This document shows positions 9,703-62,750 of a DNA stretch of 62,750 bases, one piece after another. How positions within the stretch are numbered: the stretch's first letter is position 1; every line of letters starts with the position of its first letter. Made by a program: the position numbers and the translations under genes. Source of the DNA: Haliotis rubra (Eukaryota). The DNA lies in contig NW_025766155.1 of assembly GCF_003918875.1 (NCBI RefSeq), forward strand, positions 1 through 62,750. The letters run 5' to 3'. The notes beneath the pieces are model-generated. The model was not told the origin of the DNA and ran no database searches. It saw nothing but the letters and a program-made list of their open reading frames with translations.

Positions 9703-9747
9703 CGCACATATGTACGTATTTGTATATGGATGAATGGATGGATGGAT
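9671..9747. repeat. (TG)15 microsatellite plus short (ATGG)n
   Basis: Read directly. Confidence 0.9.
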
Positions 9748-31800: not shown

Positions 31801-31873
31801 TTAGTTTTAATGAGACAATTGCGGTGTTCAGTCGACACATAGGTTAATGATAACGCTAATACTCGTTTATGTT

Positions 31874-32152: not shown

Positions 32153-32228
32153 GTGAAAATATCATTTTGCCGTAAATACCTCGTGGCTTCTGTCCAGTAT
32201 CTTGTCACAAAATACGATAAATGCCAAT

Positions 32229-32420
32229 GTTGTTTAACGCCGCACGCATCAATAGTCTAGCTATATGGTGATCCAGTGATCACAGCATGAGCATCGATCT
32301 ACGCAGCTGGGATATGGTGGCATGCATGTGTTAACCAAGTCAGCGAGTCTTACCACCCGATCTCGTTAGTCGCGCCTTACGACAAACATGTGTTGCTGAA
32401 GACCAATTCTAACCTGGATA
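32229..32420 (-). mobile_element. SINE family B
   Basis: tccagtgatcacagcatgagcatcgatctacgc...ttagtcgcgccttacgacaa matches the family on the minus strand. Confidence 0.78.
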
Positions 32421-33726: not shown

Positions 33727-33880
33727 AGGGGCGGTGGGGTAACGTAATGGTTAAGGCGTTTGCTCGAAAACCCGGGTTCGATTCCCAACATGGCTACAAC
33801 GTGTAAAGCCCATTTCTGGTGTCCCCTACAGTGATATTGCTGCAATATTGCTAAAAGCGGGTAAAACTAAACTCACTAAT
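33727..33880 (+). mobile_element. tRNA-derived SINE family C
   Basis: ggggcggtggggtaacgtaatggttaaggcg..ggttcgattccc..aagcccatttctggtgtcccc..ttgctaaaagcgg..aactcact. Confidence 0.82.
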
Positions 33881-34139
33881 TCTTTTGTGTATAGTTCATA
33901 TCAATTGGATAAAGGTATATGTTATATATTATACTTTATATATAATGTGCCATGTTCAAAGTTCTATGTCATGATCACCTGGTGATATTCACATTATTAG
34001 TTTCGGATCTGTTTAAAAATATAATGTTTATTCAGGCCGACAAAATCCATGTCCACTTATTACAGTCCCGCTGCACAGAATAGCATGAGTGTATATTACA
34101 CATATAATTGTTTCCACCTACAGCATACCTGAAGTCGAC

Positions 34140-39760: not shown

Positions 39761-40155
39761 TACTACGATATGAAATAGTCCCCAAAATGTGTCCTTTCTT
39801 TAAAGTTAGCGAAATACAGAAGCTATCACATTTTGATATTAAATTTTTCCTGTAACCGCCTAGAATTGTTTAGATTTGCATCGATGAAGCAGTTAAGCAG
39901 TTCAAACGAACGGAATATATAAGAAGATGGGTCCAAATCATCACTCAACTAGGCAAAACTAAGGGAGATATAAGTGACATTTGTGACGTGTCCTCGTTAA
40001 GAAGTACATGACATTTACATATTACATGTTCAGTTTGGTTTTGACATGCCTGTAGATCTAAAAAAGCTTCGTCCATGTGAAAGGGTATTGAACATCGACA
40101 CGCGATCAAAAGGAAGAACGTCCTACCTTTAATCTTATCAACGTTCATGTCTTGC

Positions 40156-40510
40156 GACCGCCTCCGTGGTGTAGTAGTTAGAGCGTTCGCCCGGAGAGTG
40201 GAAGGTCGCGGGTTCGATCCCCGACCGCGTCATACCAAAAGACGTTAAAAATATGGTACTTGTTGGTCCCTGTCTGGCGCTCGGCATTAACGGGTACAAC
40301 AAGGACTGGTCGACTCGGAGTCAGTATAATGTGTCTGAGAGGGGTATTCATGCTTCACTGCGGCATGGTATCTTAGTGAGCTAGCACTATAAAACCAGCT
40401 TCAGTCTGGGCTAGTACAAGCAGCCGCACATACACATACACACGCATTCACGTCGTCATATGAGCGAAATATTCTCAAGTACGACTTTAAACCCAATTTC
40501 ACCTCACCTC
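40156..40510 (+). mobile_element. SINE family A, full length
   Basis: Box A tggtgtagtagttaga, box B ggttcgatccc; TSD tcatgtcttgc. Confidence 0.92.
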
Positions 40511-40726
40511 ATGTCTTGCACACTTAAACCTGCAGGAGTGAACTGAGTGAAATACCCAAAATGTACATGTACTCGTTGTATTAGTACTAAAGGAAATACT
40601 AAGAAATAGCAGAAAACTTAGGCTAATCTCTTAGCTTCCCTTCTTTAATCTTAACAAGGCTCATGTCATGTGCTTGCATCAGGTGAACGTGAAATCTAGT
40701 AGTACATTTCTTGTGGTAAGGAGCGA

Positions 40727-40858
40727 GGGGCAGCCGTGTGGTAAAGGCGTTTGCTCGTCAGGCTGAAGAGCTTTCACGGGTATAATGTATGAAGCCCATT
40801 TCTGGTGTCTCATGCTGTATTATTGCTGAAAGCGGCTTACACCCAAACTAACTCACTC
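40727..40858 (+). mobile_element. SINE family C (diverged)
   Basis: gcgtttgctcgtca..gaagcccatttctggtgtc..ttgctgaaagcggc..aactcactc. Confidence 0.7.
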
Positions 40859-41407
40859 TTGTTACAGGAGTGAACATGGTGAATTACCCAAAATTGTGTG
40901 CATGTACACGTTGTATTGGTACTGAAACACATCCTATAGGAGAAAAAAAAAACCCCAGAAACCGTAGGCTTGTAGCAAACTGGAAAATTAGAGAGATCTT
41001 AATGTTAAGTCAAACACAATATTATGACTACCATGACTTGCCACACACCGGTCGTGCACGGGTGTCTTCACAAGACCACCATAATCGGTAAGTGTACCTA
41101 CAGGATCGATAACAATTGTCACATTAACAGCACGGACAGTGTCTGATTTTAGATGAATTAGTGGCAGAACTGTATGTAACCGGTTGAGGGAGCACAATAT
41201 CCGGCCGCGACGTCCGGCTGTACGTAGTAAGCAAGCTAGTACTGACAGCATCGGGTCTTCAGAATACAAGCCAGGGATAGTGTACTGTTCACGGTTCAGT
41301 TTCATCTGGATAGATCTGATAGTTGTAACGAGGGGCCTACTGGCGTGCAGGAGAACGTTTGAACGCCGCTTGTGTCACTCAGCGGGTTGGAACAGTAACT
41401 AGATACA

Positions 41408-41454
41408 CGTGGAGATCCGGGTTAGAATTGATCTTCAGAAACCCATGCTTGTCG
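41408..41454 (+). mobile_element. SINE family B 5' end, truncated at the fold-back junction
   Basis: gagatccgggttagaattgatcttcagaaacccatgcttgtcg is followed by an abrupt loss of homology. Confidence 0.7.
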
Positions 41455-44400
41455 CCAGCATGGTACAATAAACTCGCCCGTGCTGCCGTAACTCTTCCTT
41501 TGTTTTCAACGCTGCCCACAATATTTTACCATTTCACGTTCTGATAGCCTATGACGTACTGATGGAGTAAAGAGAGGCTAAAGACAACTAAAGATTTTCT
41601 GCTATTCTTGGTATTCATACAACATTATGTACATTTTGGTATTTCACTCAGTTCACTTTCCTGCGAATTTTAATATTGCAGGCTGTGGTGGTGAAACAGG
41701 TTTAAGAATAAAACGCTGATATTTCGCTTCATATGACGACGTGGTAAATATATAATGTATGATACTGACTGCTATGCTGGCGCAACAACTGTTTTACCGA
41801 AGATGCTAACGCAAACATACCGAAAATTAATATGAATACCCTACTCAGGCTGACTCCAGCCAGTCATGATGACGCCCGTTAATAAAGGTGTATTACCATT
41901 TTAACGTCTTTATTTCGAACGCGGTCGAAGTCGACACCGACGCTTTCGAACGGCTTATGCCGTTATGAACGACGGTTTCATCAAGGTAGAGACGGATAAC
42001 TCACCGTAATTCTGGACGAACGATCTGCGAACATGTCAAACAAACTGGTAACCTCAACCAAATGTCACATCGCTAACGAGACGCGTCTGTGTGCTTATCG
42101 CCCTTGGTGCCTGGATGACCATCTTCATATTCCGTTCGTTTGAACTGCTGCTAACGCATCGACAATCTAAGCTGGTAGGCGTTACGGAAAAATTTATCCA
42201 TCGAATAACTGTATTTCGCTAACTGAAAGAAACCGACTGGGGACATATTTCGTAAACAGTATCGTCCGCCGTTCATCGACCAATAAATCTTCTCCGCTGC
42301 GGCTTTTCGAACTGACCGCCGTTGATCATTGATATCCATTGCCATCGGAAATGCGCCATTACTGAAACACGGTATCACAAACATATACGTATTACGTATA
42401 AACGCAAAGTTTGATAACGCGCCGATTGCGGTCGCAGCTGTTTCATACATTAACGGCTCGTAAAATGTTAACACAATCGTATTTCTTCATGATGGCACGG
42501 AACGTGATTTATTTTGGAGAAAGTGATAAACGCTTTAGTGCGGTTTGGTCAGGCTTAACTCGTATGACGAAATCCAATTGAAGTGAAATTGATTAAGACG
42601 AAGTCGTGATATGGAACTGAAGCAAACGCCGCTGACGTAAATGACAATAGCGAAAGAACAATTTGCCGTAAATGAAAGCAATCGTCGTGAAGTACAGCGG
42701 TAACCGAAAATCGGGCGTATCCGGCTTCACGAAACCGGAAAAATTTCCAGCAATACTGCCCCGCTTCTTTGAACTAAATTTCTTTACTGACAGGTATCGG
42801 CGGACAGAAATACGTTCGTCGATGATTTGATGTCGTCTTATACCAATTCCTGTTTACCGAAGAAACTGCGAAATCGGTCTCGTCTGTTTCTCGCTGATTA
42901 TTTTAATCGAAACGTAAACGTATAAAACGGTATGTTTAATTGAATGACTTCCGGATTTGAAAAGTCGTACATTCTATTCAGGCGTCGCACCTGTGAAAGA
43001 AACCATTGGTAAAAGCTGCGGCCTCATTCCAGGTGAAGGTCACATGGCTGGCATTTCTGGTGTATCATCATTGCTGGCTCGAAAGGAGATGAAATTCAGT
43101 ATGGTTTCGACGCTTATTCTGAATAAATGCAATTGATTTTCGGCCGCGGCGGGCTGGAGACCGGTACCATGTATTTCGCTAGATGCTGTGTTCGAAAAGG
43201 GGCTAAGCCTGTCGCCGCAATGTTGCGCTCCCAATGACGTAGGTTTTGAGGTCGCTGCAAAAAGTACGCTGGCCATTTGACACCAGCATTGACAAAGAGT
43301 GATGGCTGGTGCCGGGAAAGTCAGCTACGACTACAGTGACTTCGAAATGTCGACTAAACCGAACACGGCATCGTAAACTTTCTTTGTCGAAACCGGCATT
43401 ACCGAATTTACTGCGTGTGTCCATATAACTTCCAGTGGTATTTTGGCAAACAGTAGCGCCGACTTGTCAATTTTCGGCTCTGTTCCCGTAACCAAGTAAT
43501 ACCGTGAAGGGATGACTTTGGAGTCGTGAACACCTGGCAGTTTTGCGCTTGACCGCATTCAGTACCGCTGATGGCGACATCAGCACCTTCTGACGGAATG
43601 TCGTGCAATCTTTGAACCGAGATCATCGTATCGAAGTCTTCAAACATTGGTAATGGTGAACAACTTTCGGCATCTGTATTATTTTCGGAAATCGGGCAAT
43701 GATGAGCAATGACGTTACTTTTGTCGTAATGCACTAATGATGACAACATCGCCATGGTTCAGACAAATTAAAGAAAGGTTTTTGTCAAATGTTTTGTCCC
43801 GATGAAAGTTACGGCATCGGTTCGCCGAAGGCAACACTGTATTTCGAAAGTTGACTCTTCGGTTGCAAATAAAGAAATTGGCGTGCGAAACACGGTCCTG
43901 AACTACAGCAATTGCGTTGTATGATGCGGTCTTCGTACTGAAGGCAACGCCCGTGGTGACTACTGACTGGTCGAACTTCGACGATCATTTCACTTTAATG
44001 TTTCATGGCATTGATGATGATAGCATTTTGGCGCATCGGCGTATTTCGGCCGTAACTGTATGTTTTAATGAGTAATGTCTGTCGAATATCGAGACAAGTA
44101 TTTACTGCGGTATGCACCCATACATCCGGGTATCGTTGTTTGCACGCTCTTTGGTTTAATCGGCGCCAGCTGAAACGGGTCATGGCACTACCGGTGTCGA
44201 TCTAATCGGACTGAGCTTTGTTTATGTAGTTTTGCTTAACTCGACGTCGAAATGACAAACGGCGGCAACACTGACTTCCGTAACGGGGAACCGTACGTAA
44301 GGCATCCAGCTTTACATGAACGAAAAGAATATGATAAAGGATAACGGTTAAGTTCATTATTTGAGATTTCGAATTTCGAGCTTCAACGGCTTACGCCACA

Positions 44401-47400
44401 CGCTGCACGCACGTACTTTGCCGTTATTCTCCGGCGTAAAGCCAATTTCCTTTTCACCCTGCTGTCGCCGTAATGCCCGCTTTATTTGTTCGAGGCAACT
44501 TCTCCGGCGAAATACCGTGGAACATGAAAAATTCCGGTCTTATTCCGGCCGATTGACGTACGAATATGTGACATGCCGATCATTAATGACCGATACCGGT
44601 CACGGTAAAGGGAACCAGCGAAAACAATAATACCGGCACTCGCCTCGCCGGTATCCTACTGAGCATTGCGTACCCACTAAATGCGGCATCGACACCTTAC
44701 ATCCCGACAGTAAATATGGTTTGCGATTAATGAACACTCGCCGCACTGCCGTTGACAACATGTGATTGTTCGACGCCGCCTCGCGCTTTATAAATGACGA
44801 TTAATACTGCAACGACCGAAGGCAACCAGTATGAAACGCCGAAGTGGGCAAACTTTAAACGGATGACGGCATTCGTGTTCTGGCGTTTACCGCTTCGGCT
44901 ACCGATCTCCAAACTTCCCAAAAATGCCAGCAAAGTGAGATGACCAGATTGAGAATGCGTCGACAATATTTCATTACGCAATAAACGGGCAAACAGTTAT
45001 GTTACACGATAAATGGTGAAATTATGCAAACTACCCGATAAACAAGGACGGTAAACGGCAATTATCAAGATTTCGGTAAAACTTATTAATAAACGCTAAA
45101 ACACAACTGAACAATACCCAATATGCTTCGGGCTACCTTCAATCGCCAGCGAAGCAGTTAGATCGCTATGCTTGGGAATGACAGAGGGGAAGTGGGATGC
45201 AATGAACAATCTTTGCGTGATATCGACCCGCATGTTCGATCGGCCACTGGGGAAGAAGATCATTATGATATTGCGAAATCATCAGGCATGGCAATTCTTC
45301 TTCGATTAGTATGGTTGGTTTGTTTAAATATTCTGGGGCTGGCAATCACGATGAAGCCTGCCATGATCGCTGGCAAGGTTTTATTCGATGCTGTGAAAGG
45401 AAATCTCGTGATCATAACATTCTCTGTTAAACGCTCGGATGACATGTTGCTTAATGTTCGGAATATTCGCTGAACAATTTTCAGGCTTTCTTACCTTTCC
45501 GATTCTTTTCCCCATATCGTTCGTCGCCTGCGATTAATTTTCGACCATCCTTGACCAGGCGCAATGTGGACTGAAATCAATGCATATAACACATGTTACT
45601 GAGGAAGATAACCTGTCTGAAACGGAAGGTGAACAAATCGAATGAACGTTGTGTTACGCTGTTGAAGAAATGGTACGGCGCAAAGTCTGCGAAACGTACG
45701 ACGACCGGCGCGACGTTCGTAATTAACACTGGCTGCCATGCTGATGCGCTGTTGAGCGCTTCGTTAATAAGGCGGTATTTTAACGGGCATGAAACCGAAA
45801 CCTTTAATCGGTGTAGAGGCTACTGGCGTTCCCGAGCAGGCGCGTTATGTAGATGACGGTGAAGTTGCTGAACAACTTCGCTCGGGTTTCTGACTACCGT
45901 GAAGATATTAACCGCGTTATTCCGACTTAAGCCATGTATATTGTGAATGTTGCTGAAATGAAGGCGTGGATATCTGGTTTTGAAGCAGGGCCGGAATAAA
46001 GATTCGTTGTCTTTGCAGGCTGTTTTATCGCAAAGCAAACTGGCGATGATTCACATAACTTCGGGATTCGACGCGTTTGGGTAATCGGCCATTCCCTGGA
46101 TATATTTTGACCCTTGAACAGCGCGAGCTTCGAATCGAACGCTGACTGATACTCTGTAATCATCGCTTGCCAGCGATCGCTATTTATTAATCTTCGCCGC
46201 TCGAAACTCGGCGGCATTCGTCGTCTGCGCAAAAGACGTTATCGGCATTTATTGCCTCCCATGATCTTCTTGGGCATCTGCGAACAAACTACAGTCTCGA
46301 CAGAGATATGTTAACGGCACGGGCCCGCTATGGACATGAACGCTGTCAATTTGACTGATATACTCGCAACTCGGTTCAGGCTGATAAACAATTGCGTCGT
46401 TCGTTTAAACGAAACTATATTTCTTGAGATTGATGAAATTGGTTTGGCGTCAGGTAACTGATATTTCGCGGCTGAATGCCATATTTTAACGTCTTTCGAC
46501 GCGGTCAGGATCGACCGCATTCCACTTCTCCGGGCTAATTTCGCTACGCCACGGAAGACGATAAATCTTGAAAAGAAATAACGGGAGTTCGAATCTTAAC
46601 GAAATACCGGGCCACTGACGCGGCGTTCTTCTGGCACTGCGAATTAGCCGTAACCTTTGAGATTACCCAGTGTAGCTGTTGTGCCTTATCGCTTCGCTCT
46701 ATAAATGGCGTAATATATTGTTTTCTTGATTCTTTGACTATTAACGGAATATGCGGGGCTCATAATAAATAATGGCTTGATTCTGACTCACTGCGAGCTT
46801 TCTTGTTGCGATTCAAGCGAAACTGCGTCAATACGCACTATTCAATATTCACCCTACGATCCTGATAACGCCAGTGTTTGCTACTGTCTTCATTGCATCG
46901 ACTTCGTATTATTGTCATACGCTTTTATTCTTATTAAATAGACTGAGTCGGACGTAGTTTTAGGCGCGAATAAACATTATGATTTTCAACTTCAATGTGG
47001 TTATCGCCAGTGTCATGTTTATAAACTTGTTTATGACTTTATATATAAAGGGTATCGTATCATAATAACGCTGCATCAGTTACGATATGAACTATGCGCA
47101 AAATTGGTGATTTGGTTACGCCGCTTTAACTGTCGGTACGACTGGCTGGCGGGGAACCGGGAAATGGGCTTTTACCGTTAACCATGTTAGTCGACTTTCC
47201 GACGCCTGGCTTACTACTTCAGACGATAAATAGAGCAATTCGTAGTAATAACGGCTTTTGTTGTGATTATTACTCGACGGATTTTTAATTAACCGGTCGG
47301 TGTCGTTATGGCGTTGAACGATTTTGCGTCAATGCGATCGGAATTGAATTCTTTATGGTGCGCGATAGACGAAAACAAAGAAGATGGTAATCGTTGTTGA

Positions 47401-50400
47401 CCTTTCGAGATCATTGATACTATTATTGACCTATCGAAGAACATTCGGCATTAATTAATTCGGTCGGTTGCTAAGATTCGCTTCAAAAGAACGATTTCGA
47501 ATTATGGGTACTGAACGATGTTCCGTATTGAAGGATGTTTATCCTGGAGATTTGTCGGTAAAATTAACGACAATAATGATCGATAATGATAATGAACTGA
47601 ACTGTTATATCGGCTGAAAGGGACGCAACTGATTGCGGCAATAATGTTTTAAACAACATGTGCGGACGCCATAAAACCCATCATCGATGAATAACTCATC
47701 TTCGCATCGAGTGATTAACAATACGCGCTTTAAAACCATCGAAGACTTTGATACGACGCCACTGAAGGCAACGATCGTTACGGGTTTGCTGCTAAACGCG
47801 CAGACTGTAGATTTTGACGATACGGTGTGGTATGTATGCAAAGGCTGCATCTGGGCCACTCGGCATTTATTTCTTGACCATTAGCACCCGTTGACGACAA
47901 TGTTTAATGATATATATGGCTATATTGATCCTCTACTGATTTTATCTTTGAACTATTGACGGAAATTTCGCACCCGTCATTACAAAATAGGCGAAAACGA
48001 TAACCATACCGAAAGTCCCACCGCTGATGACGGTCGCTCAAACGGCTTATTGGTCAGTTTTGGATACCGTCTGGAGTTTACAGACTTTATTGATATATGA
48101 TATTACTGGTCTCGAAAGGTTGAAATGTTTAAACGCATGCGATAAATAAAACGACAGTGTGTCTTTGGTGTGATGCTCGGCTAAATCACGGTGTATTGAT
48201 ATCGGTGCGCGAATCGAGCGGTATTTCGGTGACAGTATTGCAACCAACTTGCTGACCAAACGTACATATGTTTTGCTGAATTGTGCCGATATATCAGGTT
48301 AGGTATTCAGCTTTGCCTGTTTGTCGTGAGCGCGACTGGCACGAATCGTGAAACCGGGCTTTCAGCTGACTTCGGACCCGGCGCATGCGTACCGCCATAT
48401 CCCCGGCTTGCGCAGATCGATATGGCGCTGTGATGCTGGTCTGCTAACTGAACTGGCGTTAAACTGGCTGTTGGCGACTATCGTAATTTTGTGAACAGGC
48501 TAACAATTTGTGTTACGGCAAAAATATTATTTTCGCTCGCTGGCATTGCCGGTGCCAGTTACGTAACTGGCTGTATGTTCTGTCGAGATCTCGGCGCTGG
48601 CTGAGTTATCACCCGGTAACGGCACAGCATCGAAGCTGACCTGTCAGCTTTCGGGATCTCGTGCTGGACCCGGTATCTTATTGGCTGTATCCTTCCGGGG
48701 CTCTCATTGGCGTCGCGCTGCTGGTTCGGTTATCGCTGACAGCACCAGCCATCGATAAGCATGAAACGGTATTAGCGTTAAATCAAACCGGTATGTTATT
48801 CGACTATTTACCATATTAATATATTAAGTGCAAGATCGCGCGGCGGTTTGGCTGTCGGCAATCGTAAAGGTATGGTTTTGATGACGTGGCCTGACCGGTG
48901 ACGTGTCCCGTCACTGCGCCGACCTGGTGACCTTTTCGTAAATCGAACCATTTTTGTGCGTCTGATAACGTCACAATACGCTCGATCGGTGATAATCGCA
49001 CTCATTGACTTTATCTGCCGTTGCATCCGATTTCTTCTACGCGCTTCACGCAACTAGCATCTTGATACGTTTGCGACGGTTAAAATGATGATAATTTCGG
49101 CTTTCACAGACACTACGGCGATCTGACGCTGCGTTCGTAATGTTTACATTCCCCTGTGCGGTAATGGTATCAGACTGACTTACTCAACTTTCTGCGGGTA
49201 ATGATCTAAACTGCGCTGTTGTGAAATGCGGCATATTCCCGCCCCCGCTGATTTTGCGTTAATGACAGATGGCGGTAAAATAATTCGGGAAATATTGTCG
49301 AACGGCGAAGCGAAGCTGTTACGTCGTTGTTTTTCTGTTAACATTCTCGTCTTAACGTAGAGGGAACTGAACTGCATCAATAGAACGGCGCGCCAGCCTG
49401 ATGAGACTAGCGAATTTGGTCGCCGACGCAAAGTCGTTGTTTTCTGCTGTAAATGTCGTATTATCTTTAGAGAATGCCAGAGCGGCGTCTTGAAAGAGAA
49501 TACGCTGGCCCTGCCTGCGTGTGTAGTTGTGGTAAAGGCGCGGCAGACTGTTGTAACGTTGACGCTCCGGACGCGGCGTCTCATCGCTGCTATAAATAAC
49601 TCGGGGCAAAGGCAATCGTTAATACGCCATACATGGTGATGAAGCAGTGTATTCTTAAACATGGCGTATCAATGATTTATGGCGCTTACTGAAGCGATGA
49701 CTGTGATCCAGAGATAATGAGAGTGTAAGCTATGCAAATGTTCGGCTCGATTCGGTGATGTTGAATCAGAGGCGAACTGCAACTAACACGTGTTTACAGG
49801 CGCTTTATACCGGCGTAATCTATGAATCTGTACTTCTTACATTGCGCTTCGCCGTGTTTAGACCTCTGACCTCATTGTACCGAAGGCGAGCGAATGTTAC
49901 GTCTGAATGGCTTGAAACGCAACTCATGAATATAAGTGGGGAATTCGGTCTTAGCAGTGGATATTGTTCGGTTTGTTCCACTGCGTGTTCGGGTTCAGAT
50001 TATACGGTGAATTTCGGTTTGGAAGATGACCAGAAATGACCAGTCTCTGCCAAAATTTCCCGGAATCTGGTGTCGATTTAATTCGGTATTGACCTGCCAG
50101 TTCACCGCTGCGAACAAAGAATAATGATCGACATCACTATATTCTTTCTGCTATATCAAACTCGCTTGTTCTGCGTTAAAAGAGCGTTATTTGTTTTCCA
50201 ATATGTTCCGCGGTACTTTGTATTATCGCAAATCCATTTCTATATATTGTTGTCACTACTGGCACCGGGACGATAGCCTGAAGATTTTATGATTGTCTTT
50301 CGGTTTCGCGCGTCATTTGTTGGACTGAAACTGACGGCACCGTCGCTGTTATTCGCACTTCCATCAATATCGCTTCGTCGAGTAAATGGCAAATTCGAAG

Positions 50401-53400
50401 AAACGTTGAAACTTCGACAACGATATTGACGAACGTAAAATGATGAACGGACTCGAAGAATCGTGATATAATGCGGTCGTTTTGCGGTGTGTAATTTGGG
50501 AACATTTTGCCCAGTACTGGTACCCTTAAATGTTGTGCAGTGGATTGCGCTTGAAACGGAAGATGCGGGGTTAAACATCATCGCCAGACAAAATAATGAA
50601 CTTCGTTGATTACGCGCGGCGATAATGGGTACCAACGACACGGACGACTCGAATCATCGTGAAATTAATTCATAGCTTTCTTTGCGGCGTAATATACTCG
50701 GTCGGGCTAACACTAAGGAAACCGGCTTCGATCTGAGCTGTGCAACGTACGCCTACACGTACGCGCGTACGTCAGATATGACGAAACGTTAAACTGGGCT
50801 GCACTACTCATCTTGTGCAATAGTTGGCGGTTTTCGCTGTCTGTATTGATTTAACGATGATAATGCGTAATACATCACTTTCGTGAAATGAAATAACAAC
50901 GTATTATACGGGAGGGTATCAATGTTGAGAAGGAGATCGAAACATGGCGGTATGACATCCGTAAATCCCATAACGCCGTCTATTATTCATTTCAAAATCG
51001 AATGGCGAACGACGTGATTGTTGCGCCGCACTTTCACCCTCGAAACTTCGAAGCGACCTTGACCGTTCAGCTGCCATACTGGAATACCGAACCAGACGAA
51101 ACGATTTAACTTTGAACATTCCCCGAACTATTAGAAATTCTGCGATCTTAGTACGGCGGCGCAATTGATATCGATTTATTTTGATCACTGCCTTCGACCG
51201 AAACCGAAGATTATCCGTGTATTAACGAACTGTTGTTACATACGGTATCGAACGTTGAAGTCATGATATTTCATAATGCTCTGTTTCGATATCTCTATAA
51301 TCTTCGGTACGGTTTTGCGAAGATATATTTTCTTCTTTATTTTATGTTTTATTTCTGCCAGGATTTATTTCGTATAATGTTGGTGATTCCTCTATGAATG
51401 ATGCTTTTGCGCCGCTGTTTCATCTCGAAGCCGTATTCGTTCGTCTTCTGTCACATCGGATAAACTGTGATCTACGGGCAATCAATCGTATCGTTTATTC
51501 TGACGTATTTGACTTTGATCATACGCCATTATCTTCCGCCAGTTTGATTAGATTTAACTATTATATTAATGATTCACGTATCAACTATATGCCATTTCGT
51601 TATAACTTTAACATCTGCTTAGACCGTAAATCTAACGACGAAGTTCAGAGAACAGCGAAGACGCTGTTGGTCACCTTAAGCAATAAACATGCTGGCGAAG
51701 CAGAAGGACTATTAACACTTGCTGTAAGGTTCTCATTGAAGAACGTCGATGATGATATTCACCTGTTCAATGCTCAATTTCATCTTGACCACGGCTCTGA
51801 CTGTGATGATAGTCTCGTGCCATGAAGGCGTAACCACCTGATGGAAAAGCGGTATCATAACACTATTCAATACAACGTTACGATAGCACTATTAACGCCA
51901 TTCCCGTTCATTTACGGCGATGGCAGCAACACACTCAATATAATGAACTTACGTCGTATCATCGCTACGTTACTTTATTGATTGTTATCAGCAGAAGGAC
52001 ATTCGGTGCGAAAATTGTCGATCGGTATCGTCGATATTCGTGATTTAATCAATCTGTATTGTGAGGTTATTACGGACTCGCAGCAGCCAAACAAACATGT
52101 AGCCGATTCGAGAATCAGACTTATTCGGTGTTATCGTGGCTGGCACGGTACTGACCTGTTCACGAATGATCCATGGCGTCTATGGCGGATTTTCCTTCTA
52201 TCTTGCCGTGATTTCACGTGAACCGTTGCGTTGTTGACTTGATTTGGCTGCTATGTCGCTGGAAAGAACGCGAAAAGAACAATGTATTTTATACCGGTTG
52301 GAATCCATCAACAAGAGATGAGGAAAAGGTTTGAAACATAACATTGACGGATAACCCTCTTCTTCGGTTGAAAGCGTGAAGCAACGGTTGGTATTGACGG
52401 ACGAAAACTGGTTAATCGCCCTGATATATTCTATTCTGATGAATGTTTGCGGTGGAGCGCTACCGCGAATACACATCTCCGGATTTACCGGCTCTGGAAC
52501 GTGAGGTAAAACAGGCCAATAGCGCAATTGATCTCGTTACGACACAGTCTTCAAAAATCGACTAGTGAGTTGAAGATCATGGAATAACCGGTCAATCCGT
52601 ACATATGAAGAGGTTACTGAATTTTATAACTTCGAACACTAACAATAGACGTCGTCAATCGACCATATAACCGACAACAAATAAACTATTGACGGAGAAC
52701 TTATTAAGGGCTGATAGACTGCCTGAACCAGTATTTTGTGTTATTGATGTCCGAACTTTACGGCTGGGCGAACGTTACGGATCGATCGGTCACCTTTGGA
52801 GACGTGTTCTGCTTTGCGGTAAGGTCGGCATTCGTATCCGCGAAGCAATGATATTGTTTGAACACCAATGGCGATTTCGATGCCATCGAGGTCTGGTGGT
52901 CCGTCTGAACTTTGAATTCCGCATCGAAGTATAAATGGCATGACGTATTACTGTGTTCATCGTCATCGTCTCATAAATTGATTCGCCAGTTCACGGTTTC
53001 GGTATTAATGATTCAGAGCCTTCCGACGAAAGGTTTTGTCGATATAACGCGATAACGAACGGCATCGGTCGTCATCGATTCACTACGAACGGCATCGTGC
53101 GATTTCTTCAGTGCTTGAAAGAGCCGATACATGTCGCATTAGGCTGACTGATTCAGCCAGTGATGCGCATGATTCTGATCGTCCAAAGCGGTTGCTGCCG
53201 TGATGGCTTTGACGCCGGTCGGCTTCGGCGGCTTTCATTTTCGGTTTTGCTGGTATTGGTGATATGTTTCGCATCATTCGGCCGTTTCACTACACCGAGT
53301 TATTGACATGGCGCTACAATGATAGTGACTAGAACAAATGGTTGCGTTATGCGACCACGCGTTGCACATTTTCGTTTGTTTTAATCGGCATGACATTTAA

Positions 53401-56400
53401 TCTGAAAGAGGCGGTGGTAAAGCACGGTTGCCGAATTTGGTACTTGCGAGGCAGCAACAACGCGGCCCATGAAGCTTTGAGGGCTCCCGTATTGAGCAAC
53501 GGCATTAAGGCGAAATAAGATTGAAGCTGCCAATGCGTAAAGAAAGGAATGAAATGACCGTGGCATGTCGTAACTTGACGGCAGAGGCGCGGCTGGAACA
53601 GCGATCGGCTAACGGCTGCTTCTGCGTCAGCCATTCTTATTGATGACGTCTCACCGTCAGAGTCAGGGCTGTACCGGTACCACGGTCGATCGATGCCGTT
53701 TGGTCGAACTGAAAGAGGCGAAGTGAAGCACCTGCCACCCCTTCGCCACTCGAGTTCTCTGAAATATGTTGTGGAGTTATACTGAATGTGCGGAAGGACG
53801 ATGAGATAATCTCACTACTGGATGCTGACCGCCGATTGTCAATAATTTGCGGAAGGCGTGAATGAACTTCGACAAATACTATTATTGATAGGGTAAAATG
53901 CCGACCTTATATATTCCGAAACCTGTCTTAAGTACGAGTAACTGGTTGAAGACGGTACGGTCATTACCGCCGGCATTATGTTCATCGTGTATCATCTGAA
54001 ATTCGAATCAGAATGATGGCGACGCCTAACGCATACTGCGTAAACGCAATATCCTTCATTTCTTTCGATGGTCAAGTGATTTAAAATTTGGCAGAAATAT
54101 TGCCATGCATTTCAGCGAAGAGTATGATCACACATGAACACCGAGTAAATGTCTGCATCTGGGGCCAGCAAGGAGCCGGGATTCTTTGAGGTTTATTTTC
54201 GCTCCATTACTGATGTTTTGAGCCCTTGCGTCCATCAATATCTTAAAGCCGACTATCTAAAGGCTGCTCTCTGCTGAATTCGCCGCTCTGGATCAACTAC
54301 CCTCTACGAGGCGATTAATACTGGTCATATTCATGATTGCGACTTCCATTGTGCTGGGGTCGTGAAATATAAGCGGTCCTTTCGGTTGCCACGATTTCCC
54401 GGCTCCCCGTCGCATAACACGATAAACTTGAACAAGCGCACTTTCGGAAGCGAATTTCATTCAGGCAGTTCGCAGTTTCAAATGCTGGTTTATGAACCGG
54501 ATGGTAATGAAACCACGCTGATTCGCAATGCTTGATCGGGTCTTTAATAGTGAGGATGGTTAGATCGAGGTGACGATGGCTGCGGAATTATCGGCTTTCC
54601 ATGCTGATCGGCGATTTAACCATGAGACAAGAAGATGACGTTGTTTGTCACCGGATGGATGGCGGTTGGGCAGACGGGACGGAACGGTGGGACTCTTTCA
54701 AATTAGCGATGTATTAATGGTTGATGTGTCATCCACGGCACTCAAAATGTTCAGAACCATATAAGTGATAACGCTTTGCTGGCAATACGGCATCGTTGCC
54801 CGGCCATGTTTTTGAATGTTAATGGGCCATTCTGCTGAACGGCGGCTCAGCAAATCTTGTGACGTCTTCATGCCATGCTCTGACTTCAAACTGCATCGGT
54901 AATCAATGCCAAGCCAGAACACTTTCGAAACATAACATCTTAATCAAACGAATCAACGCCTACTTATTTATGATCGAATTTGGAGAAGTTCATTACTTCG
55001 CTAAGACAAACTCATGATTACCGAAGTCGAGATCGAAAGCATGTCTACTTTGTCTTAACCGAAGTTTCCATCACGAGGCAACATATTTCGCAGTGTGGGC
55101 TGAATATTAACGAATCGGTTGTAATGTCATGGTCATTTATTGTTTGCATCGTTCAAACGAAACTCAGGAATTATGGATAAATGTTTTATGAGCAAATGTT
55201 TTGCGGTGAGTGACTCGGACTGAAATAACAATTGGTTGGTGAATGACATTGTCTACGGAAGGTAATGTTTAATAAAGTGACACTGCTTCTGAAGTAATTC
55301 TGGCATTCAGCTAATTTTAATAACCTACTGGTATCCTGAATTTGACTGTGGTGCGATGATATTGAATCGCGCGATAATAACGGCAAAGACACGCTACATC
55401 AATATCGAGGGTATGTCATTGTTGGCATATGGTGCTATAACCATGGCGCATCACTATTGTCAGGATCACGTGGTAGCACAACGTACTGACGGCTGGTCCC
55501 TATTATGATGATCGGCTAACTAGGCACCACCGGTGATCTGACCTGTTCCATACTGTCAGTTGATAACTGACGTCAGCTGTACGGACATTAACTGATGAAA
55601 CCGACTTTCACTCGCTTACCTGCCGTTGACGATGGGCCGATTCGATGACGCCGCCCTACCCCATCTCCTTTCTCTGTTCGGCGCCGTCATGATTTCAACA
55701 TCCTGAAAATCAATGGTATGAAACGTAGTCACCCAGTTCGTAATGGTGTTTGATCACGGTTCTGTCAATCGCTTTACCCTTCGATGGCTATGCTGATCGA
55801 CTGAAACTTCTGTCGCCTGTCAATAATGCTATGAAGGAAATGAACATGGCATGCGAACCATTTTTGTTAGATCGACTGGAAACCGAGCGGATAAATGCAT
55901 TAGCAAAATCGGTTCAATCATTACGAAATTTGTCAATAAAGAGCGTGAAACAAAGATGATAAATCTGGGTGACCGATATGACGTTTCAAGCGTTCGGGAA
56001 TTGGCCGCACTGGTCACGGCTGATCGTAACGCCGCTAGTTTATTTGATAGCGTCGTATCCCCATTGACCGAGTCGCCGCTACCGTAAATGGCGTCAGCGG
56101 TTCTGCGATATGGTCGTCGTTACGGTGATCGGCTTCTCATTTAATTGTTATAGTAACATTCTGGTTAAACAACCGAATCGGCACGATGCGAGTGACGTAA
56201 CTGGTGACGCCTATGATACGTCGCGTATTCGGCCTGACGGAACGTCATTATGATTTGTTACCGGTCGATATGAAATGCATAAACGATCGACGACTTACCC
56301 CATTGTCGCAGCAACGTGCTTGCCGTTCTCTTCAGAAAACTGTGTTCTTGTTGGTGCTTTAAAGTGTTTTCGCTTTTATTACGATTGATGAACATCGATA

Positions 56401-59400
56401 ACGTCATCGCGTGCGCTGATAGATCGTGACCGATGACGTAAGCGCATTTCTTTAATGTTGACGAGTTGCGTCGACGCTGAACCGACTTCGATATTAACGT
56501 GATGATTTTTGTCGTGCGAAGGGAAAAACTTTGTTGACTAACCGTTCCTGTTTTATTCGCAAATATAATTGACAGTTGTTTGACTCCGGTCGTATCGTCG
56601 GTCGAAATTTCGGGAGTATTTGTTATTGTCTGTGCAACCGTTGCATTCTCTGGTGTATGAACGATGTCAATGTTCAAAGTGCATACTCGTAGCGACTTAA
56701 TGTTAAATACTTGCGAAAGTGTTCTAATTAACTTTTCCCCGCTGTCCGTTAAATCCTATCTTCGGTGACCCGCATTAACGGCATGACGAACCTAGGACGG
56801 CGGCACTGGCATCTAACGAAGATCATATACTACGTATTTAAGGCAGCTATTACGAATAACGAAACCGAAGGTAACAAATCTTCGATAGATGCTGGCCCTG
56901 GAGTTGAATATCGAGAGATGACCAATACGGCGACCCGCGATGCGCAACCTGCGTCGTGCTTTGTGAAGTCGATTCTTCGGCGTATTGAACGTCTTTAATC
57001 TCAGCTTCGGCAACGTCGTCACGATCATTCACCAAAACTGGACTGTTGAATTTCGCTTGGCGGTTATATCCCCTTGATCCTCTTGACATCTGCGTAAACC
57101 TGACGGAAAATGAATATAATGTCGAGCGAATATAATACTGGCCAGATCGCTTATCGAATGGTACGTTAACGCTTATGTATGTTTCTGACCAGTTAACGTA
57201 ATCTTCTTACGGTGGATCGTTCATTCAAACGCCGAAACCGCGGACGTATGTGAACTCAAAACATTTGTCTTGAAACAAAATATGAAATGGGGAGTTTCAA
57301 TGCAAAAACAAAAATACTTGCGGTCCTTCATATTGTTGCTTATTCTATACTGCGAAGCACCGATATATGCGTACCAAAGAACAGTTTATTACGGAAATTA
57401 TGTTACGATGATCATACTCAATCACTCACTCTTGTTAACGCGATATGATAACCTACTATTTAAAGTAGCAATCGTTCTTTGATTGCATTCATAATGATCT
57501 TGCGCATCGTCATCTTGCCGCCGCTGCTTCGTATGGCTTTATAATCGCGTGATGAACACTACTTTGCCTCTTTCGGCTGTCTACTACGGGCTATTATGAT
57601 GACGACTTATTCATGCGTAATATGTTCTCGTACGGGTATAATGCGGCTGGGCTTTGTAATAAAGGTCGGACATGAATGGATAATACGTGTGCTCGTGGAG
57701 CGAATGTCAGGACTTTCAAAGACGCGAAGTTGGCGTTGCTTTCGGGTTTCTTCTGGAAGTATGTATTGCTGATGAATGAAATTCGAGCGCTTGATGCATT
57801 TCGAGTGTTCCTGTTTTGTCATCGCTCTCAATTATATGTTAACAACTGCGAACAACGGCGATACGGCTACGGGCCCGAATTTCTTCATACGACGATTGGT
57901 AATGACTGATTTTTAATGCTGCACCTTCGTTGATATAACTATGCATGGAACGTGGTAATCGAACTGCGAATTGATGAACGGGATTCGGAGAAATCAATGA
58001 TTCCTATTCCATGCCGTGGTAGTGAACTCGCGGGCTTTTATCATTGTGTTTAACGGCATGTACTGTGCTGACTGAATCAATGATAATGCGTTCGAGCTGA
58101 AGTCAACGAACACGACTTTCTGGCTGTCTTAGCGTGACCTCTCCCAAACCCGTCTTGTTTCGATGCCGCACTTCTGCAACTCGCGCTGGTGAAACTCCGA
58201 CCATAACCGTGAAAACGCTCGAAAACCTCCCTGCTGAAGATAAAGCTGGCGATATTTCACCTGGTGCGGGTTTGAAATATCTCTCGCATGACCTGCAATA
58301 ACCAAACAGCTGGTGATTCAATGCTCGCGTCGTATGCCGCCAGCGACCTTATACCCAACGTCGACGGTATTAATGCTGTGATTTGTGGCCTCTGTCTTGC
58401 GACCATCTTAGGCTTTGAAGCGGTTGTCGTATGTTCAAAAACTTGAACGAACATTGAGAGTACTGCTCCATATCCCGGTCTTTATTCAAGCATGCGCTGT
58501 CAGTACTGAAAAGTATTTATCTTGCTATGCTGGGAACTACGAAGAACTGTTGGCGTGCGGACCTGACTTCTCGTACGAACGCCGCGTGAATAAGTGACTG
58601 CTTTCATTATTATCGCTGCTCTGTCATATTTAAAAATCTTCGTTCGTAAATTCGCTCATTCATGATTTCAATACCGGCTGATGAGATGGCATATGACGGT
58701 GTTTCAACTTGCGAGGATATTGTAATCAAGCGCAGAAAATATTGTGCGTCATTCGCGCACGTGCATGCATGCGTGTGATGAAGAAGGTGATGGCCGAACT
58801 AGCAATAATGAGCAAATATTGTTTTATACATGGTTATGGTGAGCAGGCTGACGAAAACTGATGCAGTGGTCGTGTTCTTCTGTAATCGTAATAACACAGT
58901 GAAACGATAATCATTACTGCGGTGTGACTTAAATATTAACTCACTCGTACTGTGGCGAAACGATGGCATTCAGCGCGAAACCAAGAGCAATTCATCCGGC
59001 TTTACGGCTTTTGTTAACGCTAACTTCCACGCTGTCATGATGCGGATCGAATGACCAGGTTAGACGCACGTCATCAAATACGGTGGAAAGAAAGAACGTT
59101 TCGTGCCCGCGATAATGCCGGAACGATACTGGTCTTGAACTATGTCATTTTTCTGCAATATGTTGACCGCTTTCGCGATACGAAAGGCAAAAATGGTTTT
59201 TTGTATTCGGATGGCTGATGCAACGGCATCAGTGGTCATTTTTATGTTATCGTTTACAATAACGGACGATTCCAGCATCTCCAGGAAAAAGTCACGCTGC
59301 TTGTTCTTGCGCGTATGCGTTCGGTTTTAAACGCTGATCCCAATATCGTCTTGAATAAAGCTGCTCTGTTTTCAGTACGCGGTCTTTGCCAGTTGATAGC

Positions 59401-62400
59401 AAAATTCGGTACAAAAACCGCGCTTTATGTTGACCAGCAATGTTTTATCGCGGCGTGCATTGTTAAATCTGGAGTCTTTATGGAAAGGCATACGCCGATC
59501 GGGTAACCACCATTTTCGTACGACGAAGACTAACTGCAACCAAGGCGCAATTTCGGTGGCGTATTATGAAAACGTGATTTCGGTGATATAACCGCCATCG
59601 TAATATTAATTTGGCGTTCTCATATAGACGATGCCGCCACATAGAATAAACACCAAACTTCGACGGTTGGTGACAACTCAACGCAGAGCCTATTCCCCGA
59701 CATTGTTGCCCAGATGAAACCGAACTTTCAACTTTGAACGACCGCTGTCACGGTTGCCAGCGAAGCTATGGCTTTAGTAAATGGTAAAACAAGAACTCGG
59801 TGTTAACTGAACGATGTTTGACCGTGCTTTCACGTTCCCAAAACCATGTGTAATCGGCTGGCCAATAATAGAGTGACATTAATCGCTGGAGCGATAACGC
59901 AGTAATCGTCGCGGTGAACGGTAAAAATGAAGTTTGGCTTTATCGGACGATATTTCGCTCGCTCTGCATTTTATATTGACTTTCCTTTGTTTCCAGCGAA
60001 CAATCTGGTTGATCTTGGCTCGCCTTCCCCAATCCTTGCGTTTAACATGATACCCACTCATAATCTCGAAGTCGACTGGTCACCTGATTGTGCCAGTAAT
60101 GCCGGCGTTGAACGAGGATCAATCAGTACTAACGTCTTTTGGTATGATGCGACCGAGATACCAACTTTCTCAGGCGACGCCTCTAACTGCACCAATTTCA
60201 TCTTAATAACGTAAATCAAAGATAGGTAATTAAAGGAGCACGCTATTATGGCATTATATGAAAGAACACTTTACAGCTCTGTACCATACCCTTTCCGCTG
60301 ACCAGAAAACTGGTGTAAGCTCGTAATGCCGAATACTTCGGCGCGAAAGTGATAAAACTATGGCAGGATATACTGGTGACGTATCCTGGCTCAAAGAAGC
60401 CCATACTTGTTTGATGAGTGAGTTAGCTGGCATAGCTCACCTGTATTGGTCACTGTACAACAAAATGCTATTTGATGTAATATGTGACTTACGGCACAAA
60501 TGGCTGAGGAAAAATCGTATAACACCTTTATTGTTGAAGCTGTATATACTGAATGTATATTTATATCTGTCAATGCTTACCCACGTTTAATGTGAACTAC
60601 ATTTTATGGCACATTTTCGGCCGAATATTGAACTGGAGAGCTGGATAATCGGTATAACCGTCAACAACGATCAATGATGCATGTCTGACTTTGGCTGTCA
60701 TGTCCTGTACGTTCATTAACACTAAATTAATGTGGCACAGCGTGGTTAGTTGAATACTGACTGGTATCGAATATATGCCGCTGTTTGATAGGGGCCGTTC
60801 GCCAATTTATGGCCGGTTGATTTTATGGCTGTACAATAATTACCCCAAAAATTTATGTACCGAAATATGGGCCCTGCGTGCCGTGTACAAAATCTGTCAA
60901 AGTCATGTTTGTGGCATGATTTCAGAGCATGCTTTTGCGTGCAAATTGTAACCCCGGTGCGTTATTGGCCGTTGATGGACCCCTCCCCCGGCTCCCCGGA
61001 ACAAAATGGTGATTACACCTTAGGTCACTTTACCGCCCAAAACCGCCGCCGCCGCCACTTGCCCCGCCCCGAAGCCGTAGGTGTGGACGATTCTGGGACC
61101 TTAACGCGGTGACTGCAAATGGGCTGCAGGATTTGGCTACCCATTGGGGCGGTGGGCTGCCACGGCCCTAGACACTTGTCGTAACGTAACGATTTATAAA
61201 TGTTTCGATGCGAGCAAATTGACTTTGGCGGGTCTTCGCTGATATTAAGTTTCGACCTCCGACTTTTGTTTGTTGAAGCAATGCGGATAATACTACGCAC
61301 ATCAATCTGTAATCACTAAACGCGAGGAACAAAACTTTGATGTTATATATGTTTATTAAAATAATCATATCTACATATGTTGAGTGCGGTTGCTATGACA
61401 AAAGATTCAGCTCTAATATATCTTTGAACCCATCTTTGTATTTTTCGTTTTAACTGATTTATCTGTTTATGATGAAACCTGAATAAGAACTTTCTTCAGG
61501 CGTTGGGCTTCCGGTAATCATCAGGTGAAGTCGATTCTTCAACAACCGCTGCTGAGCGACGATCGGTGGTCGACTATTCACTGATTGACAAATGTCGTCA
61601 CCCTTTAGATTGATATTTTATACTGATGATACTGGATTGTCTGAACCGAACTCGATTGGTAAAGACGGCTGTCATAGCGGGATTTTAACTGAAAGCGTGC
61701 GATTAATAACATGCATACAAACTAGCTGGGCAATTAAGGGAAAATATTTCTGCGCTTCGGCGCTATCAAGCGCCCGAAATCAAACGTAATAGTTTTCAAT
61801 ATTTCTTCAACTTTCAATACTATTGTTTCGTATTTATTGGGGAATGTCGTCGGTACGTGTCATTATTATTCACCGGTTTCTCTCAACTTCTTCTTTCACC
61901 TTCTTTGGCTCTGATTGTGTTTATGCCGACGGTGATAATCTCGATATGCGTGAAATGCGTAACCGTTACCACGAACATAGTTTGCTGCTAATTTACAATG
62001 TTGCGACCAACTTACGTGCGTCGGTTCAGGCTTCCTACAAACGATAAATAATCTTTAAAGACGTCGTTACTCACGCCAATGACTTACGTTAATCGTGAAC
62101 AGCGAATATCTGTGCAGAAAGTTGTTGACCGCTATTCGTGTCGCAATGAATACTGACGATGTTCGGAATCATATTAACAATTCAGAAGTATTGGACGAAT
62201 ACCAACGTGAACATCGTAATTTCGTATGCGGTCGAATAATAAATTTACAGAAGACAAACTGAAGATAATTGACACTGTTTCTGTGCCGACGAAGCTGATA
62301 CGAAGCTTTTCCATTCGGTCTGTCAACGCCGGTAGCTCTTTAATAAATTGGCGTGAAACATTTGGTTTTGACATCGATTTCTGAAGAACTAAAATCGGGT

Positions 62401-62750
62401 TTAATATTATCAACGCAAAGTGATGATAAAGGCTGCGTCATGAACTTTACTTTAATCGATACTCCTTACAGTGATAAATACGCGCGGCACTTCGGTAAAG
62501 CCGTTGAGATCGTACTGCTGATAGCGATAGAATGATCGGCGCTCTTAATTTCTTCGTTTTCGTAACCAGCAATTTCCCGCAAAACTAATGAGGAAGAACG
62601 GCATTAATATTTGCGACCGTCTGAACTCCAGATCGTTTTTGAAGTCGCAGTTTCAAACTAACCCATCGACGGGCGCGCTACCGGGTTAATCTTATTATCG
62701 ATATTGGAAGTCATCGTGGTGGTGGATGGATGGATGATCGATCGATGGGT
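41455..62750 (-). other. Degraded reverse-complement copy of ~40700 to ~15000 (probable fold-back long-read artefact)
   Basis: Colinear reverse-complement anchors: 41627-41655 vs 40540-40568; 42120-42195 vs 39841-39930; 46480-46560 vs the 34533 SINE; 55040-55085 vs 24205-24255; 57270-57320 vs 21560-21612; 61880-61920 vs copy A exon 7; 62590-62645 vs 15061-15130. Confidence 0.95.

What the first reader, a model, noticed from the sequence alone, without database searches (positions are those of the whole stretch)
41455..62750. Last 21 kb is a noisy mirror image of the preceding 26 kb (fold-back chimera)
Seen: reverse-complement anchors are strictly colinear from 41531<->40695 to ~62630<->15075, so ~25.6 kb is rendered in ~21.1 kb (~0.82x). 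Small deletions are pervasive and exons, SINEs and introns are equally corrupted. Established: nanopore template strands followed unsplit by their complement give this inverted, lower-accuracy, deletion-rich second half. Inference: the window is one read or an unpolished contig end, so the locus has three genes here, not five or six.
Basis: partly seen in the sequence, partly recalled or inferred. Interest (0 to 1): 0.75.

Follow-up and report, generated by a model that had tools for sequence, protein, structure and literature searches.

The report
Fold-back read artefact at contig end
The last 21 kb of this small abalone contig is not genome sequence: it is the error-laden second-strand half of a fold-back nanopore read that polishing never corrected, so the genes it seems to hold are ghosts.

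Summary
Window 41531-62679 aligns colinearly, in reverse complement, to 40695-15029 at a length ratio of 0.82. Match is 61%, with 18% of columns deleted, 18% mismatched and 2% inserted.

The window is the whole contig C1265 of a 1.38 Gb assembly. Its size and contig count fit the published nanopore-based Haliotis rubra assembly.

Bases 1-41454 align to a 2.95 Mb contig, C2412. Identity is 96-98% at the ends and lower in the middle. The alignment stops exactly at 41454, and C2412 runs on into sequence unrelated to the mirror.

The mirror carries C1265's own variants: 228 of 340 informative sites, against 23 for C2412. Its substitutions are strongly strand-asymmetric (A>G 14.0% against T>C 5.6%). 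Homopolymers of 6 or more are almost absent. Exon-like pieces, a young SINE and the remaining sequence are damaged equally.

Contigs from three public runs cover every bin before 41500 and almost none after it.

Verdict: an unpolished fold-back read, not a duplication. The assembly used five 2D (hairpin) libraries called with a 1D-only basecaller, which I think is the likeliest source. No hairpin sequence was found at the pivot, so that part is inference.

The left part looks like an unpurged haplotig.

The parts
1..41454 (+). Polished part of the contig. It is colinear with C2412:1610487-1566747 (minus strand) and is probably the other haplotype of that locus.
   Evidence: megablast chain at 96.1% (1-18497) and 97.6% (34642-41454), with 82-94% identity and structural differences between 20 and 32 kb. 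The alignment ends exactly at 41454; contigs of three runs cover every 200-base bin from 38501 to 41500.
15029..40695 (+). The stretch of the polished part that is mirrored in the noisy arm.
12299..14103 (+). Exon-like pieces of short-chain dehydrogenase (HPGD-like) gene 1. These pieces lie outside the mirrored stretch.
22039..26661 (+). Exon-like pieces of dehydrogenase gene 2, mirrored in the noisy arm at about 53.1-56.8 kb.
35721..37781 (+). Exon-like pieces of dehydrogenase gene 3, mirrored in the noisy arm at about 43.9-45.6 kb.
40156..40511 (+). Young SINE-like repeat copy, 96-96.6% identical to unlinked genomic copies.
   Evidence: 8,068 first-look candidates, and all of the roughly 38 full-length copies among those scored are 94-97% identical..
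41408..41454 (+). Start of a high-copy repeat that is cut off at the junction.
   Evidence: depth in the millions, and loose ends at 41453/41454 that run on into the family consensus. C2412 runs on with that same repeat, whereas the window does not.
41455..41530 (.). 76 bases of filler at the junction that match nothing.
   Evidence: alignment scores no better than shuffles; unique in the genome; no ONT Y-adapter or hairpin oligo recognisable.
41531..62750 (-). Noisy, deletion-rich reverse-complement image of 40695-15029. I read it as raw second-strand read sequence.
   Evidence: unique in the assembly; no match to C2412 beyond the junction; 12 of 15 bins at zero depth in X1 and 14 of 15 in X2 and X3.
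41684..41945 (-). Image of the SINE copy in the noisy arm, only about 62% identical both to its source and to other family members.

Best explanation
Bases 41455-62750 are not abalone genome sequence. They are the second-strand half of one fold-back nanopore read. The pore read one strand of a long DNA fragment and then its complement, and the basecaller emitted both as a single read. An assembler used that read as the end of a small contig.

The first half overlapped other reads and Illumina data, so it was polished into the good sequence at 1-41454. The second half was too inaccurate for any read to map to it, so Racon and Pilon left it raw.

The likeliest source (inference, roughly 55-60% within this explanation) is one of the five SQK-LSK208 2D libraries used for this assembly. 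In those, a hairpin linker joins the two strands covalently. Albacore 2.3.3 has no 2D caller, so the whole molecule is called as one 1D read. A complement strand that passes faster would then come out compressed (0.82x) and badly miscalled.

The noisy arm probably also kept the contig from being purged. At most 66% of it can align to C2412, which is below the 70% default of Purge Haplotigs. The polished part is most likely the second haplotype of C2412:1566747-1610487.
For: Shown:
- Colinear inverted image at a ratio of 0.82.
- Error make-up of 18.4% deleted, 2.3% inserted and 18.1% mismatched, with ts/tv 1.0.
- Complementary substitution types are unequal: A>G 14.0% against T>C 5.6% (p about 1e-62), and G>A 10.8% against C>T 6.2%. 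Only the read-out of one strand produces this.
- Homopolymers of 6 or more occur at 0.05 per kb, against 1.1 per kb in the source.
- Damage is even per kb and equal in exon-like pieces, the SINE and the rest.
- At 340 clean sites where the contig differs from C2412, the mirror has the contig's base at 228 and C2412's at 23. It has another base at 37 and a deletion at 52. Segments present only in this contig are mirrored too.
- The SINE copy in the source is 96-96.6% identical to unlinked copies and its image is 62% identical, so all the change lies on one branch.
- C2412 runs on past the junction into unrelated sequence, and the mirror matches nothing there.
- The mirror is unique in the assembly.
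- Contigs of three runs cover 15 of 15 bins before 41500. After it they are absent from 12 of 15 bins in X1 and from 14 of 15 in X2 and X3, even at 80% likeness.

From papers:
It was built from 14 LSK108 and 5 LSK208 libraries with Albacore 2.3.3, Porechop, wtdbg, DBG2OLC, Racon, Pilon, QuickMerge and Purge Haplotigs.
- LSK208 is the 2D hairpin kit. The 2D caller was dropped from Albacore after version 1.2.4. When the hairpin is ignored, the molecule is called as one 1D read. An example trace shows the template taking 2.5 s and the complement 2 s.
- The Purge Haplotigs default alignment cut-off is 70%.
Against: - No hairpin or Y-adapter sequence is recognisable at the junction.
- The pivot is not symmetric. 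About 760 bases (40696-41454) have no image, and 76 bases match nothing. A plain fold-back read does not predict this. It needs an extra assumption, for example that consensus or Pilon local reassembly overwrote the pivot with true forward sequence until it ran into the high-copy repeat at 41408-41454.
- The LSK208 libraries had read N50 values of only 3-9.5 kb, so a read of 47 kb or more would be an outlier there.
- The raw reads themselves were not seen.
- The run evidence comes from Logan contigs. These show presence, not absence, and come from a single study that may be the assembly's own data.
Confidence: 0.9

Rival explanations
1. Assembler mis-join. The noisy arm is a separate, very poor single read from the opposite strand of the same haplotype. 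DBG2OLC, wtdbg or QuickMerge attached it in the wrong orientation at the repeat near 41454. No chimeric molecule or read was involved.
For: The junction lies inside a high-copy repeat. The pivot is offset by about 760 bases with 76 unmatched bases. No adapter was found. The assembly pipeline merged two assemblies.
Against: No inverted homology was found between the junction and the place where the mirror resumes. The inverted copies of the 41405-41452 piece lie at about 16.35 and 32.4 kb, not near 40.7 kb. The mirror starts within 1 kb of the end of the good sequence and follows the same haplotype, as expected for one molecule. An independent read of the locus would normally have been absorbed into the consensus. 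The outcome is the same either way: the arm is not genome sequence.
Confidence: 0.05
2. A physically real fold-back DNA molecule. A hairpin-capped or snap-back fragment formed in the animal (fold-back inversion after a break) or during library preparation. The pore read it through, and the second arm came out noisy because the strands are covalently linked.
For: Covalent linkage would explain the compressed, low-accuracy second arm just as a 2D hairpin does. An unpaired loop of about 760 bases would explain the asymmetric pivot. No kit hairpin sequence was found.
Against: No inverted repeat or microhomology was found at the turn. The 76 filler bases match neither what follows in C2412 nor the source arm. 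The data set is known to contain hairpin-adapter libraries, which is a simpler source. Nothing in independent data supports the arm.
Confidence: 0.03
3. A real, ancient and strongly diverged inverted segmental duplication, giving five or six gene copies at the locus.
For: A long colinear inverted similarity exists in the deposited sequence.
Against: - All divergence lies on one arm. The source arm is 96-98% identical to C2412 and its SINE is 96% identical to unlinked copies, while the image is about 62% identical to everything.
- The image follows this haplotype's private variants, so it would have to be younger than the allelic split.
- Substitutions are strand-asymmetric, ts/tv is 1.0, and there is about one indel event per 2.6 mismatches, with deletions 8 to 1 over insertions by bases.
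- Exon-like pieces show no excess conservation.
- It is absent from C2412 and from the run contigs.
Confidence: 0.01

Closest known systems
Nanopore 2D (hairpin-linked) reads called as a single 1D read (described for SQK-LSK208 in White et al. 2017, PMC5600009)
   Same: One read holds a sequence followed by its reverse complement. The basecaller ignores the hairpin and calls the whole molecule as 1D. In the example trace the complement passes in less time (2 s against 2.5 s), close to the 0.82x seen here. The abalone data set included five LSK208 libraries called with an Albacore version that has no 2D caller.
   Different: No hairpin oligo sequence can be recognised at the pivot, and the pivot is offset by about 760 bases. 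Here the read has also been built into a deposited contig and half of it polished.
Unsplit template-then-complement reads in 1D nanopore libraries (the in-silico chimeras that the 1D-squared method exploits)
   Same: The paper on chimeric reads discusses fast loading of the next strand.
   Different: From my own knowledge, such a second strand is an ordinary 1D read of normal accuracy with Y-adapter sequence at the joint, and Porechop (used here) would usually split it. The arm here is only 61-70% accurate and no adapter is seen.
PacBio missed-adapter (SMRTbell read-through) palindromic reads and the palindromic contig ends they cause
   Same: The geometry and the consequence for assemblies are the same: a contig end that folds back on itself. 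This comparison rests on my own knowledge and was not tested here.
   Different: The platform differs. PacBio errors are rich in insertions and both arms are equally accurate. Here the errors are rich in deletions and the second arm is much worse.
Real genomic palindromes and inverted segmental duplications
   Same: Two arms in inverted orientation around a spacer.
   Different: Real arms are supported by independent reads, diverge on both branches, and show strand-symmetric substitutions and few indels. None of this holds here.

Membership tests
Fold-back long-read artefact left unpolished in an assembly | The second part is a colinear reverse complement of the part just before it | tested here: met
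   chain from 41531<->40695 to 62679<->15029, E = 0.
Fold-back long-read artefact left unpolished in an assembly | The second arm shows a raw-read error profile: deletion bias, loss of long homopolymers, strand-asymmetric miscalls, and evenness along its length | tested here: met
   18.4% deleted against 2.3% inserted; runs of 6 or more at 0.05 per kb against 1.1 per kb; A>G 2.5 times T>C; every 1-kb bin at 0.56-0.72 match.
Fold-back long-read artefact left unpolished in an assembly | The second arm derives from the same molecule or haplotype as the first | tested here: met
   228 of 340 informative sites follow this contig and 23 follow C2412, which is noise level. Contig-specific segments are mirrored.
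Fold-back long-read artefact left unpolished in an assembly | The second arm and the junction lack support in independent sequence | tested here: met
   C2412 runs on differently; the arm is unique in the assembly; zero depth in 12 of 15 bins (X1) and 14 of 15 (X2, X3). Caveat: these are Logan contigs from one study.
Fold-back long-read artefact left unpolished in an assembly | Adapter or hairpin sequence at a symmetric pivot | tested here: not met
   no ONT oligo scores above shuffles at 41401-41600; the mirror resumes about 760 bases back. Consensus or polishing may have overwritten the pivot, which I could not test.
Fold-back long-read artefact left unpolished in an assembly | A single raw read contains both arms | not testable with these tools
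   The raw nanopore reads were not available. The runs found are kept as contigs only.
2D hairpin-library read called as 1D | The data set holds 2D libraries and was called without a 2D caller | tested here: met
   five LSK208 libraries, Albacore 2.3.3. LSK208 is the 2D kit, and the 2D caller is absent after Albacore 1.2.4.
2D hairpin-library read called as 1D | The second strand is compressed and of lower accuracy than a normal 1D read | tested here: inconclusive
   0.82x and 61-70% identity; a single example trace with a time ratio of 0.8. No systematic reference was found.
2D hairpin-library read called as 1D | The read comes from an LSK208 flow cell and shows the hairpin bridge in its raw signal | not testable with these tools
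   No raw reads or signal. The read N50 of those libraries was 3-9.5 kb, so a read of 47 kb or more would be rare.
Real inverted segmental duplication | Divergence shared between both arms, a strand-symmetric substitution spectrum, few indels, and support from independent reads | tested here: not met

The most novel reading that the evidence does not exclude
The two strands were joined in a real hairpin-capped fold-back DNA molecule from the animal, for example a fold-back inversion intermediate after a double-strand break with an unpaired loop of about 760 bases. On this reading the join was not made by a kit hairpin or by the basecaller. The contig end would then record a rare somatic rearrangement intermediate.
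Probability: 0.03. Interest if true: 0.4.

Novelty: not a real feature. Interest (0 to 1): 0.1.

Why it matters
It matters for curation, not for biology. About 21 kb of this deposited contig is not sequence of the organism. It holds ghost images of two dehydrogenase genes, and all five open reading frames of 110 or more codons in the window lie in it. These could be annotated as diverged paralogues or pseudogenes.

The remaining 41 kb probably duplicates a locus already present on a large contig. It appears to have escaped haplotig purging because the junk arm lowered its aligned fraction.

Two other first-stage notes describe similar compressed fold-backs elsewhere in the same assembly (not checked). 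The artefact may therefore be systematic wherever 2D-kit data were re-called with a 1D-only basecaller. Users of this assembly should screen contig ends for it.

Tried and rejected
1. I looked for ONT hairpin and Y-adapter oligos, as printed in the supplement of PMC5600009, at 41401-41600 and across the window. No score exceeded shuffles.

2. I tried to place the 76 junction bases (41455-41530). They match neither the unmirrored 40601-41454, nor what follows in C2412, nor anything else in the genome. A long low-stringency alignment of 41455-43000 to the C2412 continuation scored alike on both strands. I take that as alignment noise, in line with the BLAST blank.

3. I planned a survey of 20 other contig starts for raw-read-like ends. 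How common the artefact is in this assembly was therefore not measured.

4. Pfam on ten minus-strand open frames of the paralogous blocks gave nothing. The genes are on the plus strand.

5. BLAST of the SINE image against six genomic copies found nothing at E 1e-5. Pairwise alignment was needed.

6. I considered homology-driven mis-joining at the junction repeat. The inverted copies of that repeat piece lie far from where the mirror resumes.

Full report
**What the window is**

The window has no N runs. It is the whole of contig C1265 (62,750 bases) of a genome of 1,378,282,171 bases in 2,855 contigs.

Notes by other agents of this scan call the genome blacklip abalone. The published Haliotis rubra assembly A6 has 1,378,265,264 bases in 2,854 scaffolds. 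That is this genome minus one piece of 16,907 bases, which I guess is the mitochondrial genome.

That assembly was made as follows:
- 14 LSK108 and 5 LSK208 nanopore libraries, base-called with Albacore 2.3.3 and trimmed with Porechop.
- Assembly with wtdbg 1.2.8 and with DBG2OLC.
- Polishing with two rounds of Racon and one of Pilon.
- Merging with QuickMerge and reduction with Purge Haplotigs.

**The observation**

From 41531 to 62679 the sequence is a colinear reverse-complement image of 40695 down to 15029. That is 21,148 bases standing for 25,666 (0.824).

Over the three long gapped alignments the make-up is 61.2% match, 18.4% deleted, 18.1% mismatched and 2.3% inserted. There are 1,307 deletion events, mostly of 1-3 bases, against 378 insertions. 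The best local segments reach 68-77% identity. Every 1-kb bin lies between 0.56 and 0.72 match.

**The left part has a twin on a large contig, and the twin does not fold back**

Bases 1-41454 align to the minus strand of C2412:1610487-1566747, on a contig of 2.95 Mb. Identity is 96.1% over the first 18.5 kb and 97.6% over the last 6.8 kb. Between 20 and 32 kb it drops to 82-94%, with several insertions and deletions.

The last 47 bases before it (41408-41454) are the start of a very high-copy repeat. C2412 and the loose ends of run contigs carry on through that repeat, whereas the window breaks off. No part of 41455-62750 resembles C2412 beyond that point. The arm has no other copy in the assembly.

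**Tests that separate a sequencing artefact from a real duplication**

1. Whose variants does the mirror carry? I took 340 clean substitution sites where this contig and C2412 differ. The mirror has this contig's base at 228, C2412's at 23, another base at 37 and a deletion at 52. The C2412 figure is what noise alone gives. Segments present only in this contig (for example 30890-32204) are mirrored at the usual identity. The arm is therefore a copy of this very haplotype, made after the alleles split.

2. Where does the divergence lie? The source arm is 96-98% identical to C2412. Its SINE-like copy at 40156-40511 is 96-96.6% identical to six unlinked copies. The image of that SINE (41684-41945) is about 62% identical to its source and to the family. 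All change is on one branch, which a clock-like process acting on two real arms cannot give.

3. The spectrum. Complementary substitution types should be about equal in double-stranded DNA. Here A>G is 14.0% per A against T>C at 5.6% per T (p about 1e-62). G>A is 10.8% against C>T at 6.2%. This asymmetry also explains the higher G+C of the arm. Further, ts/tv is 1.0 and deleted bases outnumber inserted ones 8 to 1.

4. Homopolymers of 6 or more are almost absent from the arm: 0.05 per kb against 1.1 per kb in the source.

5. No selection. Exon-like pieces of the dehydrogenase genes are hit as hard as everything else: 62.2% against 61.2% match. Four of the six examined have length changes that are not multiples of three.

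**Independent reads**

One search found three runs from a single study, kept as Logan contigs. I laid them on 38501-44500 at a permissive 80% likeness. Contigs lie in all 15 bins up to 41500. Beyond it, 12 of 15 bins are empty in X1 and 14 of 15 in X2 and X3. The non-empty bins hold only trivial depth.

At 41001-41205 two contigs of about equal depth are seen in runs X1 and X3, which come from the same sample. One is identical to the window and the other has 15 differences. This fits a heterozygous locus of which this contig is one allele.

Three caveats apply. Contigs show presence, not absence. The study may be the assembly's own data. Contigs break at the junction repeat in any case.

**Mechanism**

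The arm is the second-strand half of a fold-back read that was never polished, because nothing can map to sequence this poor.

I think a hairpin-linked 2D read is more likely, for these reasons:
- SQK-LSK208 is the 2D kit, with a hairpin linker.
- The 2D caller was dropped from Albacore after version 1.2.4.
- When the hairpin is ignored, the whole molecule is called as one 1D read.
- In a published example trace the second strand took 2 s against 2.5 s for the first. That ratio of 0.8 is close to the 0.82 here.

From my own knowledge, an ordinary 1D complement read would be about 85-90% accurate. It would also carry Y-adapter sequence that Porechop splits on, whereas Porechop's adapter list holds no hairpin.

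Several points count against the 2D reading or leave it open:
- No hairpin or Y-adapter is recognisable at the junction.
- The LSK208 libraries had read N50 values of 3-9.5 kb, so a read of 47 kb or more would be rare.
- The pivot is not symmetric. Bases 40696-41454 have no image and 41455-41530 match nothing.

A possible reason for the asymmetry is that consensus with Illumina contigs, or Pilon local reassembly, overwrote the true pivot with forward sequence until it met the high-copy repeat. I could not test this. An assembler mis-join of a separate poor read, or a real hairpin molecule, remain minor alternatives. In each case the arm is not genome sequence.

**Consequences**

Arm A holds three tandem short-chain dehydrogenase (HPGD-like) genes on the plus strand. 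The noisy arm holds images of the second and third and of a conserved block behind the first.

All five open frames of 110 or more codons in the window lie in the noisy arm. I take them for chance products of its higher G+C.

The colinear matches to C2412 cover about 38 kb, or 60% of the contig, and at most 66% could align. This is below the 70% default at which Purge Haplotigs reassigns a contig. I infer that this is why a redundant haplotig survived. The paper does not state the setting used.

Two other first-stage notes report compressed fold-backs on other pieces of this genome.

**Verdict**

This is not a real feature of the genome. Its interest is low, except as a warning about this assembly.

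Noticed in passing
window 7656-8457; related block at 31871-32153: Minisatellite of 10.7 copies of a 75-base unit at 85% match. A 283-base related block lies at 31871-32153, inside a segment that this contig has and C2412 lacks.
   Followed up: partly
window 40156-40511, also 12485-12811, 17944-18260, 29489-29866: Young SINE-like element of about 356 bases. The first look found 8,068 candidates in the genome, and the roughly 38 full-length copies among those scored are 94-97% identical. It looks recently active in this abalone.
   Followed up: partly
window 20000-32200 against C2412:1576000-1590000: The middle of the polished part is only 82-94% identical to C2412. It has several insertions and deletions of 0.2-1.3 kb, while both flanks are 96-98% identical. 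This could be very divergent alleles of the tandem dehydrogenase cluster, gene conversion among paralogues, or two different animals in the data set. The paper used two individuals, one of them from a farm.
   Followed up: no
window 41001-41205: Two run contigs of about equal depth cover this place. One is identical to the window and the other has 15 differences in 205 bases. They are seen in runs X1 and X3, which come from the same sample. The sampled animal seems heterozygous here, with strongly diverged alleles.
   Followed up: no
C2412:1614787-1629999 (loci L025, L026): Further paralogous blocks of the dehydrogenase gene units lie 5-20 kb beyond the region allelic to this contig, at 78-87% identity. 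The tandem family on the main contig is therefore larger than three.
   Followed up: no
window 38501-41454: Run contigs repeatedly leave out single bases relative to the window, for example at 39211, 39247, 39831 and 39955. Differences from C2412 are mostly gaps: 117 gap columns against 45 mismatches in 6.8 kb. Even the polished part keeps one-base indel errors, in line with the frameshifts other agents report in this assembly.
   Followed up: partly
whole genome G000: G000 exceeds the published assembly by exactly one piece and 16,907 bases. That is the size expected of an abalone mitochondrial genome, but I did not check it.
   Followed up: no
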